DNA of 63,547 nt, filler included, from Olpidium bornovanus S191 (taxonomy: Eukaryota; Fungi; Olpidiomycota): NCBI GenBank assembly GCA_017911155.1. It is 29 parts of 29 records of this genome, joined end to end, with 100 filler letters (N's around TTAATTAATTAA, not from the genome) between each part and the next. Parts side by side here need not be neighbours in the genome. Positions count along the whole stretch, not along the records: positions 24,399 to 27,621 come from JAEFCI010013478.1; 28 more parts are not named here. The stretch is one strand, 5' to 3'. Every line of letters starts with the position of its first letter. Within the stretch, counting starts at the first letter, position 1. This document shows, piece after piece, positions 4,015 through 27,721 of this stretch. The position numbers were made by a program, and so were the translations under genes. The notes under the pieces were generated by a model. It was not told the origin of the DNA. It saw only the letters and a program-made list of their open reading frames with translations, and did no database searches.

Positions 4015-4761
4015 CATGATGGACACTTCCGACACCCTCCTTCCGGTTGGTGGCCCGTCGCGCCGCTGATTGATGGCTCGAGCGGCCAACGGTGCGGGAG
4101 AAAGACACGGAATTTTTTTATACACATATTTCTTTCCTCTCTCCATTTGCATTCCGTTCTTCCCCTCTTTACCGCTCGTTCTAACTTTCTGGGGCGATGC
4201 TCGCGGCGGACCCAGCTGGCAAAGATGCTTCGGTACTTGAAACTCCAAAAGTTGTGCGACGCGGTGTTCGTCGTCTTTTGCGTCTCTTGGATCTACACCC
4301 GGCATTATCTCTACTTCATTGTGGTGCGATCCGTCTGCGCCGAGTCAAGCGTCCTGGTAAGCCGTCGGGGGGTGGGGATGGAGGGGAAGGCGGATCAAGG
4401 TGTCTTCCCCCGCGTTCCGGAAATCTTTAATTCTGCGGTTATTAGATTTCCGAGCCGAGCGGGGGGGGGGGGGATTTTCCCACGCCCACGAACGGCCGAC
4501 TCAATCCGCGGGGTGGGTTTTTTTTTCTTTGTTGCCCAGGCGACCTATCCACCCCACCCTGAGAACCCATTCAGCGAGTTCGGAAAGAACGTCTTCGTGG
4601 CCATATTCTTCGTCCTGCAGGTGCTGCTGCAGTACTGGTTTCTCCTTATCTGCAAGGTCCTGTACCGGGTCGTCACCGGCAAAGGCGCCGACGACGCACG
4701 GGAGACATCGTCATCCGACGAGGAAGAGGGCGAAGACAAAGACGAGGGGGGAAAGGAGTGA
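4015..4761 (+). CDS. LAG1: Ceramide synthase (Lag1/Lac1, TLC domain), 3-prime part, spliced
   Basis: MDTSDTLL / LAKMLRYL..LCDAVFVVFCVSWIYTRHYLY / LQVLLQYWFLLICKVLYRVVTGKGADDAR..SDEE: Lag1-family C-terminus with acidic tail. Confidence 0.88.
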   Translation, partial: HDGHFRHPPSGWWPVAPLIDGSSGQRCGRKTRNFFIHIFLSSLHLHSVLPLFTARSNFLGRCSRRTQLAKMLRYLKLQKLCDAVFVVFCVSWIYTRHYLYFIVVRSVCAESSVLVSRRGVGMEGKADQGVFPRVPEIFNSAVIRFPSRAGGGGIFPRPRTADSIRGVGFFFFVAQATYPPHPENPFSEFGKNVFVAIFFVLQVLLQYWFLLICKVLYRVVTGKGADDARETSSSDEEEGEDKDEGGKE

Positions 4762-24398: not shown

Positions 24399-24581
24399 GG
24401 TCAACGACGACGAGACCGTCACGCTTCCACCGCCCGACACCGACCCGGCCGACGTGACGCTAACGCCGCCCTCTACAAGAGTCGGTGAGTCATACCACGA
24501 CACCGATGCGCCGTATTGCGACCCGGCCGCAGCGGACAGAGTCGCCAAAAGGAAAACACTAAAAGCGAATAAATATCTCAT
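24399..24581 (-). CDS. Putative pIII-like attachment/minor coat protein, N-terminus (truncated by contig end)
   Basis: MRYLFAFSVFLLATLSAAA signal peptide followed by Gly/Ser/Val-rich GSQYGASVSWYD..GGVSVTSAGSVSGGGSVTVSS; position after the coat gene. Confidence 0.65.
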
Positions 24582-24657
24582 ATGCAGCTTTCACAACCCA
24601 GCAAACGAACCACGCGCTGAAGAGCCCGCAGAGGTAGAGGTCGGATGTTATTTCCAT
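24559..24657 (-). CDS. 32-aa single-TM protein, putative minor virion protein (pVII/pIX-like)
   Basis: MEITSDLYLCGLFSAWFVCWVVKAAYEIFIRF*; acidic N-terminus, hydrophobic core; overlaps the pIII-like start by 23 nt. Below the ORF-track length cutoff. Confidence 0.65.
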   Translation of the reverse strand: MEITSDLYLCGLFSAWFVCWVVKAAYEIFIRF

Positions 24658-24691
24658 AAAAGGAGAGGGGGTAGGCGCTGGACCTACCCCC
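24658..24691 (-). terminator. Intrinsic terminator hairpin after the coat gene
   Basis: Perfect 9-bp stem GGGGGTAGG-(7-nt loop)-CCTACCCCC, followed by TCTCCTTTT on minus and TTTGTT on plus. Confidence 0.75.
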
Positions 24692-24709
24692 TTTGTTGAA
24701 CGCCTAATG

Positions 24710-24856
24710 TTAGGCGGTGATCGCGCGCCAGACCTTCGAAACGAAGCGGATTCCCATCGGAACCACCTTGACCGTCACGCCTGCCGCAACGATGGCGGCG
24801 ATGCCGCCAAGCATGACAGTGGCTAGACCCGCGATTGCTGTATTAACGTCGCCCAT
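24710..24856 (-). CDS. Major coat protein (pVIII-like), 48 aa, no cleavable leader
   Basis: MGDVNTAIAGLATVMLGGIAAIVAAGVTVKVVPMGIRFVSKVWRAITA*: acidic N-terminus, Ala/Gly-rich TM helix, basic amphipathic C-terminus; A/T-rich initiation region; terminator downstream. The GTG/TTG-extended 68-aa ORF-track start is less likely because it overlaps the upstream gene. Confidence 0.8.
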   Translation of the reverse strand: MGDVNTAIAGLATVMLGGIAAIVAAGVTVKVVPMGIRFVSKVWRAITA

Positions 24857-24876
24857 TGTATTAAGTTGTAGCCGCT

Positions 24877-25008
24877 CTAAACCATATCCGACGAAGCCGC
24901 GAAAATGCGTATCCAATAGGCAAAAGCCGCTACAGGAGCGCCTACCGATACAGCCACGCCCACAAAGGCGACGGCTACTTCTATTATGTCGGAAATGGAA
25001 AGTGTCAT
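24877..25008 (-). CDS. 43-aa single-TM protein, putative minor virion protein (pVII/pIX-like)
   Basis: MTLSISDIIEVAVAFVGVAVSVGAPVAAFAYWIRIFAASSDMV*; directly upstream of the coat gene. Below the ORF-track cutoff. Confidence 0.65.
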   Translation of the reverse strand: MTLSISDIIEVAVAFVGVAVSVGAPVAAFAYWIRIFAASSDMV

Positions 25009-25050
25009 CGTATTACGAATTTTTCGGGCACCATGGACGCGCCGGAATCT

Positions 25051-25329
25051 TCATGCGGCTACGCCTATCGGCTTCACCGACTGCATTGCCTTAATCTTGC
25101 GATCCAATACCCCGGCCTGAACTCTTGCATGGCAGGCCCTCCCTGAGGCTTCCCACCGCGCCAGATCGCGCGCATGGTTCGTGACCCATGCCGCCCTCTG
25201 ATTGGCCCAAAACACATCCCAATCGAATTGCCCGCCTTGCTCGAAGAGCCAGCGCACTGCGAAGAGCCGGGTTTCCCCCCTCCGGAGTGCCTCCCTCACA
25301 GAGGCGCGGACAGTTAAGGTCTCTTTCAT
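25051..25329 (-). CDS. Phage orphan protein (~92 aa; alternative start 25371)
   Basis: MKETLTVRASVREALRRGETRLFAVRWLFEQGGQFDWDVFWANQRAAWVTNHARDLARWEASG...; fills the operon gap on the same strand. Confidence 0.55.
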   Translation of the reverse strand: MKETLTVRASVREALRRGETRLFAVRWLFEQGGQFDWDVFWANQRAAWVTNHARDLARWEASGRACHARVQAGVLDRKIKAMQSVKPIGVAA

Positions 25330-25384
25330 CAAGTTAAGGCCTCGGCGGCGCGGGCGCTGACGCGCCCGCATCCGCCGAGTCTCT

Positions 25385-25609
25385 TCACGTTTGCTGTCTG
25401 CCGCAGACGGCTTGCCGGACGAGCTCGTCAAATTCCGCCTGCGTGAGTTTCCGCGCCGCGCAATAGTGCATGACGCCATCGAGCTCCAATTGGAGAAAGG
25501 CGGAGGGTTCGCCCAGCTCAACCATGGAGAATAGAAGCCCTTGCATGACTTCGAATTGCATGTCCCTCAGGCCTTCGGCCTGCCAGTCGCCGGGTTTACT
25601 TTTGGACAT
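25385..25609 (-). CDS. Phage orphan protein (74 aa)
   Basis: MSKSKPGDWQAEGLRDMQFEVMQGLLFSMVELGEPSAFLQLELDGVMHYCAARKLTQAEFDELVRQAVCGRQQT*; start overlaps the SSB-like stop by 14 nt. Confidence 0.55.
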   Translation of the reverse strand: MSKSKPGDWQAEGLRDMQFEVMQGLLFSMVELGEPSAFLQLELDGVMHYCAARKLTQAEFDELVRQAVCGRQQT

Positions 25610-25907
25610 CGAGGACTTTCCCGTTGATGCGTTGCACCAACTTTTGGCCGGTTTCCTTGTCCTTCGCGTAGGTCGACTTAGAAAAGAGGACCCTGGCCCC
25701 GAAAGGGACGAGTTCGATGGGTTCGCCTCTATCCGTAATGGGTTCTTTGGCGTCCGCGTCCGCGTAAGCGGTATGCTCAAAGGTGGCGCCGTCGCACCGG
25801 TAACCGGTCACGTAAGTGACTCGCGTCACGTCCTTATTGGTCTTGTCGTCGCGGAAAGTCGATTCCCTGCGCGTCGTCTCGTCAATACAACGAGCGATGA
25901 GATACAT
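25596..25907 (-). CDS. Putative ssDNA-binding protein (pV-like), ~103 aa (alternative start 26021)
   Basis: MYLIARCIDETTRRESTFRDDKTNKDVTRVTYVTGY...: beta-strand-rich with aromatic/basic residues and an extended hairpin segment. ATG lies 4 nt after the Rep stop; size and position match inoviral gene V. Function inferred from position and composition. Confidence 0.6.
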   Translation of the reverse strand: MYLIARCIDETTRRESTFRDDKTNKDVTRVTYVTGYRCDGATFEHTAYADADAKEPITDRGEPIELVPFGARVLFSKSTYAKDKETGQKLVQRINGKVLDVQK

Positions 25908-25911
25908 GCCG

Positions 25912-26829
25912 TCAGGCAGCTTTGAGAGGCTCAACTTGGATTCTTCCGTTTTGGTCGATGTAACAGGTTGCGAAGGCTTCGCGTTGGATGGTGCTACGGT
26001 GGAGTTGGCTTGGGTGCTCATTGTTTACTATTTTTTCTAGTGTTTCTATATTAACGGGCATGTGATACATATCCAGCGGGCGTTGCCCTTGTTCCGCTCG
26101 CTCGATAAAGACTTCGGTGAATGTATCCCGCAGGTATACAGGGACCCCGAAAAACCCTACTGCGCGACCGCGCACGACGGCACGCCGCCGCCAGCCTGAC
26201 CACTTTTCACGGAGTGTCGCAGGCATTGGGCGCGTCTCGCCCTCCGCTTCTTCTGCCTCCGGTTTAGACTTTGTCTTTCCAAAAAATCCGTTCGACGTCT
26301 GAAAGACCCGAATCGTTTTTGGATAGTCCAAAACCCAATCAGGAACACCATCGCCCGCCACGTCTTTCGTGACGTATTTGAACAGATATTTGAAATCCCG
26401 GGGCTTGTTTATCCGCTTTATCTTCGTGAAGCCGAAGCCCCAAGCCTGCTCCAAATCCTCGTTATTGATATGGCCCTTGCAGTCAAAACCACAGTGCCAA
26501 TGCGGCCAGCCTGCTTCCGTTAGTTCAAATTTAACGAAGTAACGTTTTATATTATAGCCCTGCTTTCGCAGACGCTCCACGGCGCGCCGGATGCGATCCC
26601 GGCCCTTTTCGAAAGCCGCCTGCGGCGTCTCGAAAAGGTCCGGGTCAACCGTGAGCGTCACGAATAGCCAGCCGAAGAGCGACGGGAAGCCGCGCGCCTC
26701 AAGACGCTTCACCATCTTACGCCGGCCGAGCTCATGCCACCACGAGTGCGGCGCGTATGGCGCCAGAATATAATCGTGCCCGCTCGCATGTATACGACGC
26801 AGGTAGGGCGTAGAACGCGGCTTTCTCAT
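25912..26829 (-). CDS. rep: HUH-endonuclease rolling-circle replication initiator (Rep), 305 aa
   Basis: Motif I FVTLT (26650-26664), motif II GWPHWHC (HUH at 26494-26502), motif III YLFKYVTK (26374-26388) in canonical order; no helicase Walker motifs. Confidence 0.9.
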   Translation of the reverse strand: MRKPRSTPYLRRIHASGHDYILAPYAPHSWWHELGRRKMVKRLEARGFPSLFGWLFVTLTVDPDLFETPQAAFEKGRDRIRRAVERLRKQGYNIKRYFVKFELTEAGWPHWHCGFDCKGHINNEDLEQAWGFGFTKIKRINKPRDFKYLFKYVTKDVAGDGVPDWVLDYPKTIRVFQTSNGFFGKTKSKPEAEEAEGETRPMPATLREKWSGWRRRAVVRGRAVGFFGVPVYLRDTFTEVFIERAEQGQRPLDMYHMPVNIETLEKIVNNEHPSQLHRSTIQREAFATCYIDQNGRIQVEPLKAA

Positions 26830-26959
26830 GCGTCGCCCTTTCGCTCTAAGGGCCGCGGGGCTCCGCCCCCCAGCAACTGACCCCCGATACGGCCGCAGGC
26901 CGTGGCGTCCCTCCGGGCGCGGGTTAGAACGGCTTCGCCGTGCCCATCCCTTGCCGAGG

Positions 26960-27130
26960 CGCCCTCAAGAGTATCACACCGCGTAAGGGTCTCCGCGCTT
27001 CCAAGCCAGCGCTCCGATTTTTTTCCCCAAGCTGAAAAAAACAGGCCCTTACACGGCGTGATTCTCAAGGGGCGTCCCCGACAAGGGGAAAGCGGGGGGG
27101 GCCACCCTAAGACGTCCTTAGACGCCCCCC
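26960..27130 (-). promoter_or_regulatory. Hairpin-rich intergenic region; candidate replication origin or packaging signal
   Basis: 17-bp inverted repeat 26973-26989 / 27046-27062 with outer CGCCC/GGGCG arms, inner T7...A7 stem, and hairpins TCCCC-GACAA-GGGGA (27075-27089) and CTAAG-ACGTC-CTTAG (27107-27121). Confidence 0.6.
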
Positions 27131-27164
27131 GTCCTTTCCTCCCGTTGGTCGGAGACACACCAAA

Positions 27165-27416
27165 ATGCCTACCACCACCAAACACAGCATCTGGACCAAA
27201 ACCGAGGCCTTCGCCGCCGATCTCCGCCTTCAACGATTCGAAGACTTTACCCTCGGCTTCCTCGTAATGGTAAAGACCGCCGGACGTGAGACCAAAACCG
27301 CCGACGCCTGCGCCTTCTTCTGGACTATCCAGGACGCCCGCAAATGGGCCGAAACCGAATACCCACTCGACCAACCCAGCTCGCAATTGGCCTTCCTCGT
27401 AGATCTCAGCAGCTAA
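27165..27416 (+). CDS. Hypothetical protein (83 aa) divergent from Rep
   Basis: ATG preceded by GGAG about 10 nt upstream; MPTTTKHSIWTKTEAFAADLRLQRFEDF...; C-ending codon bias. Confidence 0.6.
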   Translation: MPTTTKHSIWTKTEAFAADLRLQRFEDFTLGFLVMVKTAGRETKTADACAFFWTIQDARKWAETEYPLDQPSSQLAFLVDLSS

Positions 27417-27431
27417 CCGACAACCCGCACG

Positions 27432-27596
27432 ATGACCACCACCACCGCATGGCTCGCCTTTCTCCATTGGTTCATCGGAACCGCTTGGACCCACCTGCTG
27501 AACGGCATCAGAGCCCACCAGATCGACGCCGAATTCCCCCGGCGCCACAGCTACCGCACCCGCTTTTGGCGCCTGATTCACGCCGTAGACATGTGA
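27432..27596 (+). CDS. Hypothetical protein (54 aa)
   Basis: MTTTTAWLAFLHWFIGTAWTHLLNGIRAHQIDAEFPRRHSYRTRFWRLIHAVDM*; starts 15 nt after the previous stop, with the same codon style. Confidence 0.5.
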   Translation: MTTTTAWLAFLHWFIGTAWTHLLNGIRAHQIDAEFPRRHSYRTRFWRLIHAVDM

Positions 27597-27721
27597 ATAT
27601 GCCCTACTTCATCTAAAAAACNNNNNNNNNNNNNNNNNNNNNNNNNNNNNNNNNNNNNNNNNNNNTTAATTAATTAANNNNNNNNNNNNNNNNNNNNNNN
27701 NNNNNNNNNNNNNNNNNNNNN

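What the first reader, a model, noticed from the sequence alone, without database searches (positions are those of the whole stretch)
24399..27621. Novel filamentous ssDNA phage (inovirus-like) hidden in a fungal assembly
Seen: one 3.2-kb contig has no introns or microsatellites and carries eight coupled minus-strand genes: HUH Rep, ~103-aa SSB-like, two orphans, 43-aa TM, 48-aa coat-like, terminator, 32-aa TM and a signal-peptide Gly/Ser-rich protein. Established: this is the replication / ssDNA-binding / virion module layout of Ff-, Pf- and Cf-type filamentous phages. Inference: it is a divergent inovirus (free or prophage) of a bacterium co-sampled with, or living inside, the zoosporic fungus. 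The three smallest structural genes are missing or mis-started in the ORF track, so automated annotation would likely overlook it.
Basis: partly seen in the sequence, partly recalled or inferred. Interest (0 to 1): 0.92.

Follow-up and report, generated by a model that had tools for sequence, protein, structure and literature searches.

The report
Filamentous-phage fragment from an Opitutaceae bacterium
This 3.2-kb contig is about half of a filamentous (inovirus-type) phage genome whose named relatives all sit in Opitutaceae (Verrucomicrobiota) bacteria, so it is real and was read correctly, but it is a new member of a known kind of virus.

Summary
The minus strand carries eight tightly packed genes: an HUH rolling-circle Rep, an OB-fold protein, two conserved small proteins, a 43-aa membrane protein, a 48-aa coat-like protein, a strong terminator, a 32-aa membrane protein, and a signal-peptide Gly/Ser-rich protein cut by the contig edge.

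The Rep/OB-fold/74-aa/92-aa module recurs at 51-88% Rep identity in more than 20 public loci. Where those loci continue, they carry a coat gene, the same terminator position, a large secreted adsorption-like protein and a Zot/pI morphogenesis ATPase. Some are prophages with an integrase, including one in the Oleiharenicola lentus chromosome. Others are complete circular genomes of about 6.5 kb.

The piece itself ends before any Zot gene.

I add four points:
- The OB-fold gene probably starts inside rep (141 aa, not 103).
- The 32-aa gene belongs to a conserved family that gene callers miss.
- A 335-nt structured non-coding region lies upstream of rep.
- A conserved gene is transcribed divergently from rep.

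Inoviruses of Verrucomicrobia were already catalogued computationally. The link to a fungus could not be tested.

The parts
25912..26829 (-). Rolling-circle replication initiator (HUH Rep), 305 aa, intact
   Evidence: Pfam PF23343 REP_ORF2-G2P, E 3.8e-14, 53.2 bits against a cut-off of 27.8. PHROG replication initiation protein. 31 homologues at 39-88% identity. H110, H112, Y148, Y152 and K155 are invariant in 29 of 29 sequences. The AF2 model has pLDDT 83, and its best PDB fold matches are HUH endonuclease domains with weak E-values from 6.5e-3.
25596..26021 (-). OB-fold, probable ssDNA-binding protein. It is 103 aa from ATG 25907 or, more likely, 141 aa from ATG 26021, overlapping the 3' end of rep.
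   Evidence: 76-88% identical in relatives with mostly synonymous change. The AF2 model is all-beta with pLDDT 72. The top PDB fold matches are RPA and SSB OB domains, probability about 1 but E about 0.03. In the zone that overlaps rep, this frame is better conserved than the Rep frame in 8 of 9 relatives compared. Distant homologues P0033 and P0036 keep the N-terminal extension.
25385..25609 (-). Conserved acidic 74-aa protein of the replication module, function unknown
   Evidence: Homologues sit at the same place in all relatives, 53-69% identical with 19 invariant columns. Third-position changes dominate. No Pfam, PHROG, NCBIfam or PDB match.
25051..25329 (-). Conserved basic (net +7) 92-aa protein of the replication module, function unknown
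   Evidence: Homologues in L002, L003, L005, L007 and L036 with a conserved N-terminal half. Charge. No family or PDB match.
24877..25008 (-). 43-aa single-TM protein, a candidate minor virion or assembly protein. This is the least certain gene.
   Evidence: Kyte-Doolittle 19-residue maximum 2.24, with an acidic N-side. A 43-aa TM gene was called at the same position in L036 and L037, with weak similarity: 23 of 3000 shuffles reach the score. GC3 is not raised, at 0.49.
24710..24856 (-). 48-aa probable major coat protein without a signal peptide
   Evidence: One acidic residue on the N-side, a 19-residue hydrophobic core, and four basic residues on the C-side. GC3 is 0.73. It aligns without gaps over 44 residues to the mature part of the 91-aa coat-like protein of the O. 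lentus prophage, and 4 of 20000 shuffles reach that score. That protein weakly matches PHROG 1646, major coat protein, E 0.0066. It is the last gene before the terminator, as are the coat genes of L002, L006 and L007. No database homologue was found.
24657..24692 (-). Intrinsic terminator-like hairpin with T-rich tail directly after the coat-like gene
   Evidence: 11-pair stem with 7 G-C pairs and a 5-nt loop (I22). A G+C-rich hairpin followed by a T-run lies at the equivalent position in three relatives whose sequence there is unrelated.
24559..24657 (-). 32-aa single-TM protein, member of a conserved small-protein family that gene callers miss
   Evidence: Homologous to an uncalled ORF at L003:12630-12722: Smith-Waterman score 64, reached by 0 of 5000 shuffles. 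Also homologous to an uncalled ORF in L036: 1 of 3000 shuffles. In each case the ORF lies between the coat gene and the large secreted protein and overlaps the start of the latter.
24399..24581 (-). N-terminal 61 residues of a secreted Gly/Ser/Thr-rich protein, a candidate adsorption (pIII-like) protein, cut by the edge of the piece
   Evidence: Signal-peptide-like N-terminus, with 56% G+S+T after it. Relatives carry 382-708-aa proteins with signal-peptide-like N-termini in the same slot. There is no sequence homologue.
26830..27164 (.). Non-coding intergenic region between rep and the divergent gene, a candidate origin, packaging-signal and promoter region. It contains a long imperfect hairpin at about 26948-27087.
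   Evidence: GC content is flat across codon positions in both long ORFs that cross it. It is 89% identical to L001 and is also conserved in L002 and L034. Folded as ssDNA it gives -91 kcal/mol, z = -6.1, with 0 of 100 shuffles as stable. The other strand gives z = -4.3.
27165..27416 (+). 83-aa gene transcribed divergently from rep, a candidate regulator, function unknown
   Evidence: GC3 is 0.72. One homologue at 86% identity (P0037) holds the same divergent position next to a related rep in L034. No family match.
27432..27596 (+). 54-aa ORF downstream of the 83-aa gene, unconfirmed
   Evidence: GC3 is 0.81. No homologue was found; L034 carries a different gene at this place.

Best explanation
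The piece is about half of the genome of a filamentous phage (inovirus type, order Tubulavirales). It may be episomal or an integrated prophage. Its host is most likely a member of the Opitutaceae (Verrucomicrobiota).

Inferred mechanism, by analogy with characterised inoviruses:
- The HUH Rep nicks the origin within the structured intergenic region and drives rolling-circle synthesis of the strand that has the sense of the genes.
- The OB-fold protein coats the new single strand.
- The 48-aa protein inserts into the inner membrane and becomes the major coat. The terminator directly after its gene makes the upstream transcripts more abundant than those of the downstream genes.
- The 43-aa and 32-aa membrane proteins act as minor virion or assembly proteins.
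- The secreted Gly/Ser-rich protein is the adsorption protein.
- A Zot/pI-type ATPase, encoded beyond the edge of the piece, would extrude the particle.
- The divergently transcribed 83-aa gene is a candidate regulator.

Shown here: the gene content and order, the homology of the replication module, the presence of Zot, coat and adsorption-like genes in relatives, both the circular and the integrated forms of relatives, and the predicted folds.

Inferred: every biochemical role, the packaged strand, and the host.
For: - Rep belongs to the REP_ORF2-G2P family, with invariant His and Tyr catalytic columns. Its fold matches are HUH endonuclease domains.
- The Rep, OB-fold, 74-aa and 92-aa module recurs under purifying selection in L001-L017 and L034-L040.
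- Relatives continue with a coat gene, a terminator, a large secreted protein, a small TM protein and Zot. Zot matches: Pfam PF05707 at 24.3 bits in L002 and 35.5 bits in L007, also precomputed for L003, L005, L006 and L038; PHROG 197 and PHROG 1675 'protein I of M13'.
- L003/L004 is a prophage with an integrase in the Oleiharenicola lentus chromosome.
- L007 and L038/L039 have 30-nt identical ends, and L038-L040 are circular permutations of one another. These are circular genomes of about 6.45-6.54 kb.
- The three small proteins meet the 30-90 aa, single-TMD criterion of Roux et al. 2019 (PMC6813254).
- The 32-aa, 48-aa and 43-aa proteins have positional homologues with weak to clear sequence similarity in L003 and L036.
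- The OB-fold prediction best matches ssDNA-binding domains.
- The terminator position after the coat gene is shared with relatives.
Against: - The piece holds no Zot/pI gene, which is the only universal inovirus marker. Membership rests on relatives, and replication modules are the most often exchanged part of inovirus genomes (PMC6813254).
- Nucleotide homology to relatives stops near 25148. The structural genes have only weak protein similarity.
- The 43-aa ORF has no GC3 signal.
- Fold-search E-values are weak: about 0.03 for the OB fold and 6.5e-3 for Rep.
- No IMG/VR or INPHARED relative was found. The only phage hits are Microviridae Reps at about 30% identity.
- The host is inferred from three named relatives at 39-63% Rep identity.
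- Single-strandedness and particle shape are not observable from sequence.
Confidence: 0.85

Rival explanations
1. It is a decayed or satellite-like prophage remnant in a bacterial chromosome. It keeps the replication and coat genes but has lost its own morphogenesis ATPase, so it is no longer, or never was, an autonomous filamentous phage.
For: The piece ends before any Zot gene. Several relatives are integrated prophages. The structural module has diverged strongly from relatives that have near-identical replication modules.
Against: Every gene present is intact and closely packed, with no stops or frameshifts. The replication genes show purifying selection. Every relative long enough to tell carries Zot.
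Confidence: 0.09
2. It is a fragment of a non-viral rolling-circle plasmid or integrative element that merely shares a Rep with phages.
For: HUH Reps are exchanged between plasmids and ssDNA viruses (established knowledge; also stated in PMC6813254). None of the structural proteins matches a curated virion family.
Against: No match in 72,556 plasmid records. No relaxase, T4SS or plasmid maintenance gene in any relative. Relatives carry Zot/pI together with coat-like and adsorption-like genes.
Confidence: 0.03
3. It is part of a Microviridae-like (icosahedral) ssDNA phage, since the only matches in the phage genome collection are Microviridae Reps.
For: tblastn hits to five Microviridae replication initiators at 28-33% identity over about 40% of Rep.
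Against: No relative encodes a large capsid protein. All encode small TM coat-like proteins and Zot. The Pfam family also covers inovirus G2P-type Reps.
Confidence: 0.02

Closest known systems
Prophage in the Oleiharenicola lentus 23ND54W-5 chromosome (NZ_JBOZXB010000001.1, about 900-921 kb; loci L003/L004)
   Same: - Rep is 63% identical and the OB-fold protein about 84% identical; homologues of the 74-aa and 92-aa proteins are present.
- Its 91-aa coat-like protein aligns in its mature part with the window's 48-aa protein.
- It carries a homologue of the 32-aa protein just before the adsorption-like gene.
- The gene order is the same.
   Different: - It is integrated, with a tyrosine integrase, and it carries Zot.
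- Its coat has a long leader.
- It has an extra 215-aa membrane protein.
- It lacks the 43-aa gene and the window-type intergenic region.
- In the source the Rep is named only 'rolling circle replication-associated protein'.
Uncultured circular genomes L007 (about 6.54 kb) and L038/L039 (about 6.45 kb) and the prophages L002 and L005/L006
   Same: They share the replication module (Rep 51-84% identical). They have the order coat, terminator, large secreted protein, small TM protein, Zot. L038 has a 38-aa coat-like protein without a signal peptide, the same type as the window's 48-aa protein.
   Different: Their structural genes are not detectably similar in sequence to those of the window. Most coats carry signal peptides. 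The window's intergenic region is shared only with L001, L002 and L034.
Ff phages (M13/fd/f1), genus Inovirus (comparison from established knowledge, not tested by a direct hit)
   Same: The order is replication initiator, ssDNA-binding protein, small membrane proteins, major coat, strong terminator, adsorption protein with Gly/Ser-rich stretches, and a structured non-coding region next to the rep gene. The relatives' ATPases hit PHROG 1675 'morphogenesis (protein I of M13)'.
   Different: - No protein of the piece matches an Ff family in Pfam or PHROGs apart from the broad Rep family.
- Two extra conserved genes (74 and 92 aa) lie between the ssDNA-binding-like gene and the membrane proteins.
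- A 32-aa gene lies between the terminator and the adsorption gene.
- The coat has no signal peptide.
- A gene is transcribed divergently from rep.
Pf3-type coat proteins (short, no signal peptide; named from memory as a lead only)
   Same: A coat of about 45 aa with an acidic N-terminus, one hydrophobic helix and a basic C-terminus, and no leader (architecture).
   Different: No named hit to such a protein came back from Pfam, PHROGs, NCBIfam or the protein searches. This is a resemblance of architecture only.
Inovirus-like sequences catalogued by Roux et al. 2019 (PMC6813254)
   Same: The piece meets their accessory criteria: short genes, structural proteins of 30-90 aa with a single TMD, and mostly uncharacterised genes. 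Their supplementary table lists four detections in Verrucomicrobia as integrated prophages.
   Different: Their detection starts from a pI-like gene, which this piece lacks. No relative of the window's Rep or small proteins was found in the IMG/VR scans run here.

Membership tests
Inoviruses (Tubulavirales), criteria of Roux et al. 2019 (PMC6813254) | pI/Zot-type morphogenesis ATPase (the only universal marker) | tested here: inconclusive
   It is absent from the piece, which is cut inside the adsorption-like gene. It is present downstream of the homologous replication module in L002, L003, L005/6, L007 and L038-40.
Inoviruses (Tubulavirales), criteria of Roux et al. 2019 (PMC6813254) | Short structural proteins (30-90 aa) with a single transmembrane domain | tested here: met
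   The 43-, 48- and 32-aa proteins each have one hydrophobic stretch of 19 or more residues (Kyte-Doolittle maxima 2.24, 2.22 and 1.67). The 48-aa protein has the acidic-N, basic-C polarity of a coat protein. TM prediction here is by hydropathy only.
Inoviruses (Tubulavirales), criteria of Roux et al. 2019 (PMC6813254) | Short genes, mostly uncharacterised or similar only to other inoviruses | tested here: met
   Ten ORFs of 32-305 aa lie in 3.2 kb. Only Rep has a family match.
Inoviruses (Tubulavirales) | Circular genome of about 5-15 kb | tested here: inconclusive
   The piece is linear and cut at both ends. Relatives L007 and L038/L039 are circular at 6.45-6.54 kb, shown by 30-nt identical ends and circular permutation between samples.
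Inoviruses (Tubulavirales) | Single-stranded DNA packaged in a filamentous particle and released without lysis | not testable with these tools
   Sequence alone cannot show this.
HUH rolling-circle Rep (Pfam PF23343 REP_ORF2-G2P) | Profile match above the curated threshold | tested here: met
   53.2 bits against a cut-off of 27.8, covering profile positions 2-98 of 99.
HUH rolling-circle Rep (Pfam PF23343 REP_ORF2-G2P) | His-hydrophobic-His metal-binding motif and catalytic tyrosine motif | tested here: met
   H110, W111 and H112, and also Y148, Y152 and K155, are invariant in 29 of 29 aligned Reps.
HUH rolling-circle Rep (Pfam PF23343 REP_ORF2-G2P) | HUH endonuclease fold | tested here: met
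   The AF2 model has pLDDT 83. The top PDB matches are HUH domains of circovirus, parvovirus and geminivirus Reps, a REP-associated transposase, a Helitron and RepB. They are weak: E from 6.5e-3, target TM up to 0.53.
Filamentous-phage ssDNA-binding protein (gene V type) | Small OB-fold protein encoded directly after rep | tested here: met
   The position is shown. The model is all-beta with pLDDT 72. The best PDB matches are RPA and SSB OB domains, probability about 1, E about 0.03, TM 0.4-0.5.
Filamentous-phage ssDNA-binding protein (gene V type) | Sequence membership in a described gene V or phage SSB family | tested here: not met
   No Pfam, PHROG, NCBIfam or PDB sequence match. Only 5 cluster representatives among 1.84 billion proteins match. 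I do not file it as a gene V protein; it is an OB-fold protein in the gene V position.
Inovirus major coat protein | Match to a described coat family | tested here: not met
   The 48-aa protein has no direct match. There is only an indirect chain through the O. lentus 91-aa protein, which matches PHROG 1646 at E 0.0066.
Inovirus major coat protein | Architecture (acidic N-terminus, one hydrophobic helix, basic C-terminus) and position (last gene before a strong terminator) | tested here: met
   Coat genes of the relatives hold the same position.

The most novel reading that the evidence does not exclude
The Opitutaceae-associated phages that share this replication module form an undescribed family-level lineage of filamentous phages. 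The lineage would have its own OB-fold ssDNA-binding protein, whose gene overlaps rep. It would also have two conserved accessory proteins and a roughly 30-aa membrane protein, missed by gene callers, between the coat and adsorption genes. In addition, the presence of this contig in a zoosporic-fungus assembly would reflect a real physical association between an Opitutaceae bacterium carrying a chronic phage infection and the fungus, rather than culture or reagent carry-over.
Probability: 0.12. Interest if true: 0.5.

Novelty: new member of a known kind. Interest (0 to 1): 0.3.

Why it matters
The practical value is modest.

- The contig is bacterial-virus DNA and should not be counted as fungal sequence. 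It also hints that an Opitutaceae-like bacterium was present in the sample.
- It links more than 20 unannotated public loci, including a prophage in a named Oleiharenicola lentus genome, into one lineage of filamentous phages of Verrucomicrobiota. No isolate inovirus of that phylum turned up in my literature searches.
- It shows concretely that gene callers skip conserved ~30-aa virion or assembly genes and place spurious 215-284-aa ORFs across the G+C-rich origin region.
- The OB-fold protein is a compact candidate ssDNA-binding protein with almost no sequence relatives.

Tried and rejected
- An exact-product look-up of the window's Rep found no record.
- IMG/VR scans with Rep, the 48-aa protein and the Gly/Ser-rich fragment found no relatives. 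The 43-aa query was too short for that tool.
- The phage genome collection gave only remote Microviridae Rep hits and no DNA match for the structural module. The plasmid collection gave nothing.
- PDB sequence searches with Rep, OB-fold, 74-aa and 92-aa profiles gave only chance-level hits. NCBIfam gave nothing usable.
- I rejected the long ORFs that cross 26830-27180: a 251-aa ORF on the minus strand and a 121-aa ORF on the plus strand, called as 215-284-aa genes in L001, L005 and L006. GC content is flat across codon positions, and conservation in both frames equals the nucleotide identity.
- I rejected the TTG-started 68-aa version of the coat-like gene. Its extra 20 residues are not hydrophobic and have low GC3.
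- I considered whether the 43-aa and 48-aa ORFs are two pieces of one leader-bearing coat gene. I compared the pieces separately and joined nothing. The 43-aa ORF shows no significant similarity to the leader of the O. lentus coat, and L036 has a separate 43-aa gene at the same place. This was not supported.
- The long intergenic hairpin is not conserved in more distant relatives (z from -3.1 to +0.5). Its role as an origin or packaging signal remains an inference.
- A small profile built from four ~30-aa ORFs found only its own seeds. The evidence for that family rests on the pairwise shuffle tests instead.

Full report
**1. What is in the sequence**

The piece (window 24399-27621, 3223 bp, 50-67% G+C in 300-nt windows) carries a compact set of ORFs on the minus strand:

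| Feature | Coordinates | Size |
|---|---|---|
| Rep | 25912-26829 | 305 aa |
| OB-fold protein | 25596-25907, or to 26021 | 103 or 141 aa |
| 74-aa protein | 25385-25609 | 74 aa |
| 92-aa protein | 25051-25329 | 92 aa |
| 43-aa protein | 24877-25008 | 43 aa |
| Coat-like protein | 24710-24856 | 48 aa |
| Hairpin terminator | 24692-24666 | 11 pairs, 7 G-C, T-rich tail |
| 32-aa protein | 24559-24657 | 32 aa |
| Secreted Gly/Ser-rich protein | from 24581, runs off the edge | 61 aa seen |

- Junctions are two overlaps (14 and 23 nt) and gaps of 4-55 nt.
- No gene in the piece is interrupted. There are no stops or frameshifts; the only incomplete gene is cut by the contig edge.
- There are no tRNAs, Rfam matches or real microsatellites.

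**2. Are these real genes?**

- For Rep and the 103-, 74- and 92-aa genes, comparison with relatives shows third-position changes in excess. Examples are 35/23/121 differences by codon position for Rep against L002 and 11/7/51 for the 103-aa gene.
- GC3 is 0.61-0.73 for these genes, for the 48-aa gene and for the Gly/Ser-rich gene. It is 0.59 for the 32-aa gene and only 0.49 for the 43-aa ORF.
- The 43-, 48- and 32-aa products each have one hydrophobic stretch of 19 or more residues.
- The 48-aa product has one acidic residue before that stretch and four basic residues after it.

**3. Rep**

- Rep matches Pfam PF23343 (REP_ORF2-G2P) at 53.2 bits, above the cut-off of 27.8. It also matches PHROG replication-initiation families.
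- In an alignment of 29 homologues, the His-Trp-His columns (110-112) and the Tyr148/Tyr152/Lys155 columns are invariant.
- An AlphaFold model (pLDDT 83) finds HUH endonuclease domains as its best PDB matches. The E-values are weak, from 6.5e-3.
- There is no helicase domain.

**4. The protein after Rep**

- It has no sequence match in Pfam, PHROGs, NCBIfam or the PDB. Only five cluster representatives among 1.84 billion proteins match it.
- The model (pLDDT 72) is an all-beta barrel. Its best PDB matches are OB-fold ssDNA-binding domains of RPA and archaeal or human SSB, with probability about 1, E about 0.03 and TM 0.4-0.5. Matches in the viral structure library are weak and mostly unnamed.
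- I call it an OB-fold protein in the gene V position, not a member of a described gene V family.
- Its start is probably not the ATG at 25907 that gives 103 aa. Distant homologues keep an N-terminal extension. In the 110-nt zone that overlaps the end of rep, this frame is better conserved than the Rep frame in 8 of 9 relatives compared, for example 19/31 against 8/33 identities in L009.
- In the window the only start codon that includes the extension is the ATG at 26021, giving 141 aa.

**5. Relatives and what they add**

A protein search with Rep returned 31 proteins at 39-88% identity. All carry the same Pfam domain. The only named ones come from Oleiharenicola lentus, an Opitutaceae MAG and a Lacunisphaera MAG. 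The genome-collection scan found one locus, the O. lentus chromosome, which belongs to Opitutaceae, Verrucomicrobiota.

Fetching contigs gave loci L001-L040. The module of Rep, OB-fold, 74-aa and ~92-aa genes is collinear in them. Wherever the contig continues, the next genes are as follows:

- A coat-like protein of 38-91 aa. Most have a signal peptide, an acidic stretch, a hydrophobic helix and a basic tail.
- A protein of 382-708 aa with a signal-peptide-like N-terminus.
- A TM protein of about 53 aa.
- A Zot/pI-type ATPase. Pfam PF05707 scores 24.3 bits in L002 and 35.5 bits in L007. PHROG 197 and PHROG 1675 'morphogenesis (protein I of M13)' match down to 1.4e-23. Precomputed Zot hits are listed.

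L002, L003 and L005/L006 end with a tyrosine integrase and bacterial flanking genes, so they are prophages. L007, L038 and L039 have 30-nt identical ends. L038-L040, from different runs, are circular permutations of one sequence. These are complete circular genomes of about 6.45-6.54 kb without an integrase.

No relative shows a relaxase, T4SS or icosahedral-capsid gene, and no plasmid record matches the piece.

**6. The window's structural module**

Nucleotide homology to all relatives stops near 25148. The small proteins have no hits in the large databases. They do have positional counterparts:

- The 32-aa protein is homologous to an uncalled 30-aa ORF in the O. lentus prophage (L003:12630-12722; Smith-Waterman 64, reached by 0 of 5000 composition-preserving shuffles). 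It is also homologous to an uncalled 34-aa ORF in L036 (1 of 3000 shuffles). Each lies between the coat gene and the adsorption-like gene and overlaps the start of the latter. L006 has a related ORF (1 of 5000 against L003).
- The 48-aa protein aligns without gaps over 44 residues to the mature part of the O. lentus 91-aa coat-like protein. Only 4 of 20000 shuffles reach that score, and it is the best of 637 candidate segments. Allowing for the 637 comparisons this is suggestive, not proof. The O. lentus protein in turn weakly matches PHROG 1646, 'major coat protein' (E 0.0066).
- L036 and L037 have a 43-aa TM gene called at the same place as the window's 43-aa ORF. The similarity is weak (23 of 3000 shuffles).
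- A G+C-rich hairpin followed by a T-run comes directly after the coat gene in L002, L006 and L007, as in the window, although the sequences are unrelated.
- A coat without a leader also occurs in the circular genome L038 (38 aa).

**7. Upstream of rep**

- The region 26830-27164 is non-coding. GC content is flat across codon positions, and the long ORFs on both strands are conserved no better than the DNA itself.
- It is 89% identical to L001 and is also conserved in L002 and L034.
- It is unusually structured as single-stranded DNA: -91 kcal/mol, z = -6.1 on the gene-sense strand, with a long imperfect hairpin at about 26948-27087.
- More distant relatives have other sequences there and less structure.
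- I infer, without a test, that it holds the origin and nick site, promoters and perhaps the packaging signal.
- Beyond it, an 83-aa gene on the plus strand (27165-27416) is transcribed divergently from rep. It has one homologue at 86% identity in the same position in L034. It is a candidate regulator, but I have no evidence for its function.
- The following 54-aa ORF (27432-27596) has high GC3 and no homologue.

**8. Comparison with what is known**

- The gene order matches that of Ff phages. This comparison rests on established knowledge.
- Roux et al. 2019 name pI as the only universal inovirus marker. They list as accessory features structural proteins of 30-90 aa with one TMD, short genes and mostly uncharacterised genes. 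They also note that replication modules are the part most often exchanged (PMC6813254). The piece meets the accessory features but not the marker, because it is cut.
- Their supplementary table already lists four inovirus detections in Verrucomicrobia as integrated prophages.
- A full-text search found no paper that mentions both Opitut* and Inovir*.
- This is therefore a new member of a known kind, in a lineage that has not been described.

**9. Limits**

- The fungal origin of the assembly, and any association with a fungus, cannot be examined from this piece.
- The host is inferred only from the named relatives.
- Single-strandedness, particle shape and all biochemical roles are inferred.

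**10. Declaration of slips**

The small peptides typed into scripts were copied from tool outputs.

Noticed in passing
P0035 (protein found): A 500-aa protein contains four separate stretches that match the window's 103-aa OB-fold protein. This suggests a tandem-repeat version of the domain elsewhere.
   Followed up: no
window 27165-27179 and 27432-27446: The two plus-strand ORFs begin with nearly the same 15 nt (13 of 15 identical; repeat D11). Both products start with Met followed by a run of Thr.
   Followed up: no
L003:12630-12722; L036 about 4595-4696; L002 about 2370-2460: Conserved or positionally equivalent ORFs of about 30 aa with one TM stretch lie between the coat and adsorption-like genes. 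They were not called in the stored gene tables.
   Followed up: yes
L006:12073-12198: The called 41-aa gene starts inside the terminator hairpin that follows the coat gene. It is probably mis-started, and a shorter ORF related to the 30-aa family fits better.
   Followed up: partly
L001:548-1195, L005:9153-10004 (+), L006:9045-9899 (-): Gene callers placed 215-284-aa ORFs across the G+C-rich region upstream of rep. In the two near-identical loci L005 and L006 they lie on opposite strands. They are most likely spurious.
   Followed up: partly
L035:2-4423 (- strand): In one relative (Rep 73% identical), a gene of at least 1474 aa lies directly upstream of rep and diverges from it. Its nature was not examined.
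   Followed up: no
L038-L040 and further contigs of P0028: The same circular genome of about 6.45 kb was assembled in 10 contigs, most of them 5-10 kb long. The three loci fetched come from three closely numbered sequencing runs. It appears to be an abundant episomal member of the family.
   Followed up: partly
L001:560-856 (- strand): The closest relative has a different, unrelated 98-aa gene in the divergent position that the 83-aa gene holds in the window. The shared intergenic region ends exactly at the start of these genes. This is a variable cassette next to a conserved origin region.
   Followed up: partly
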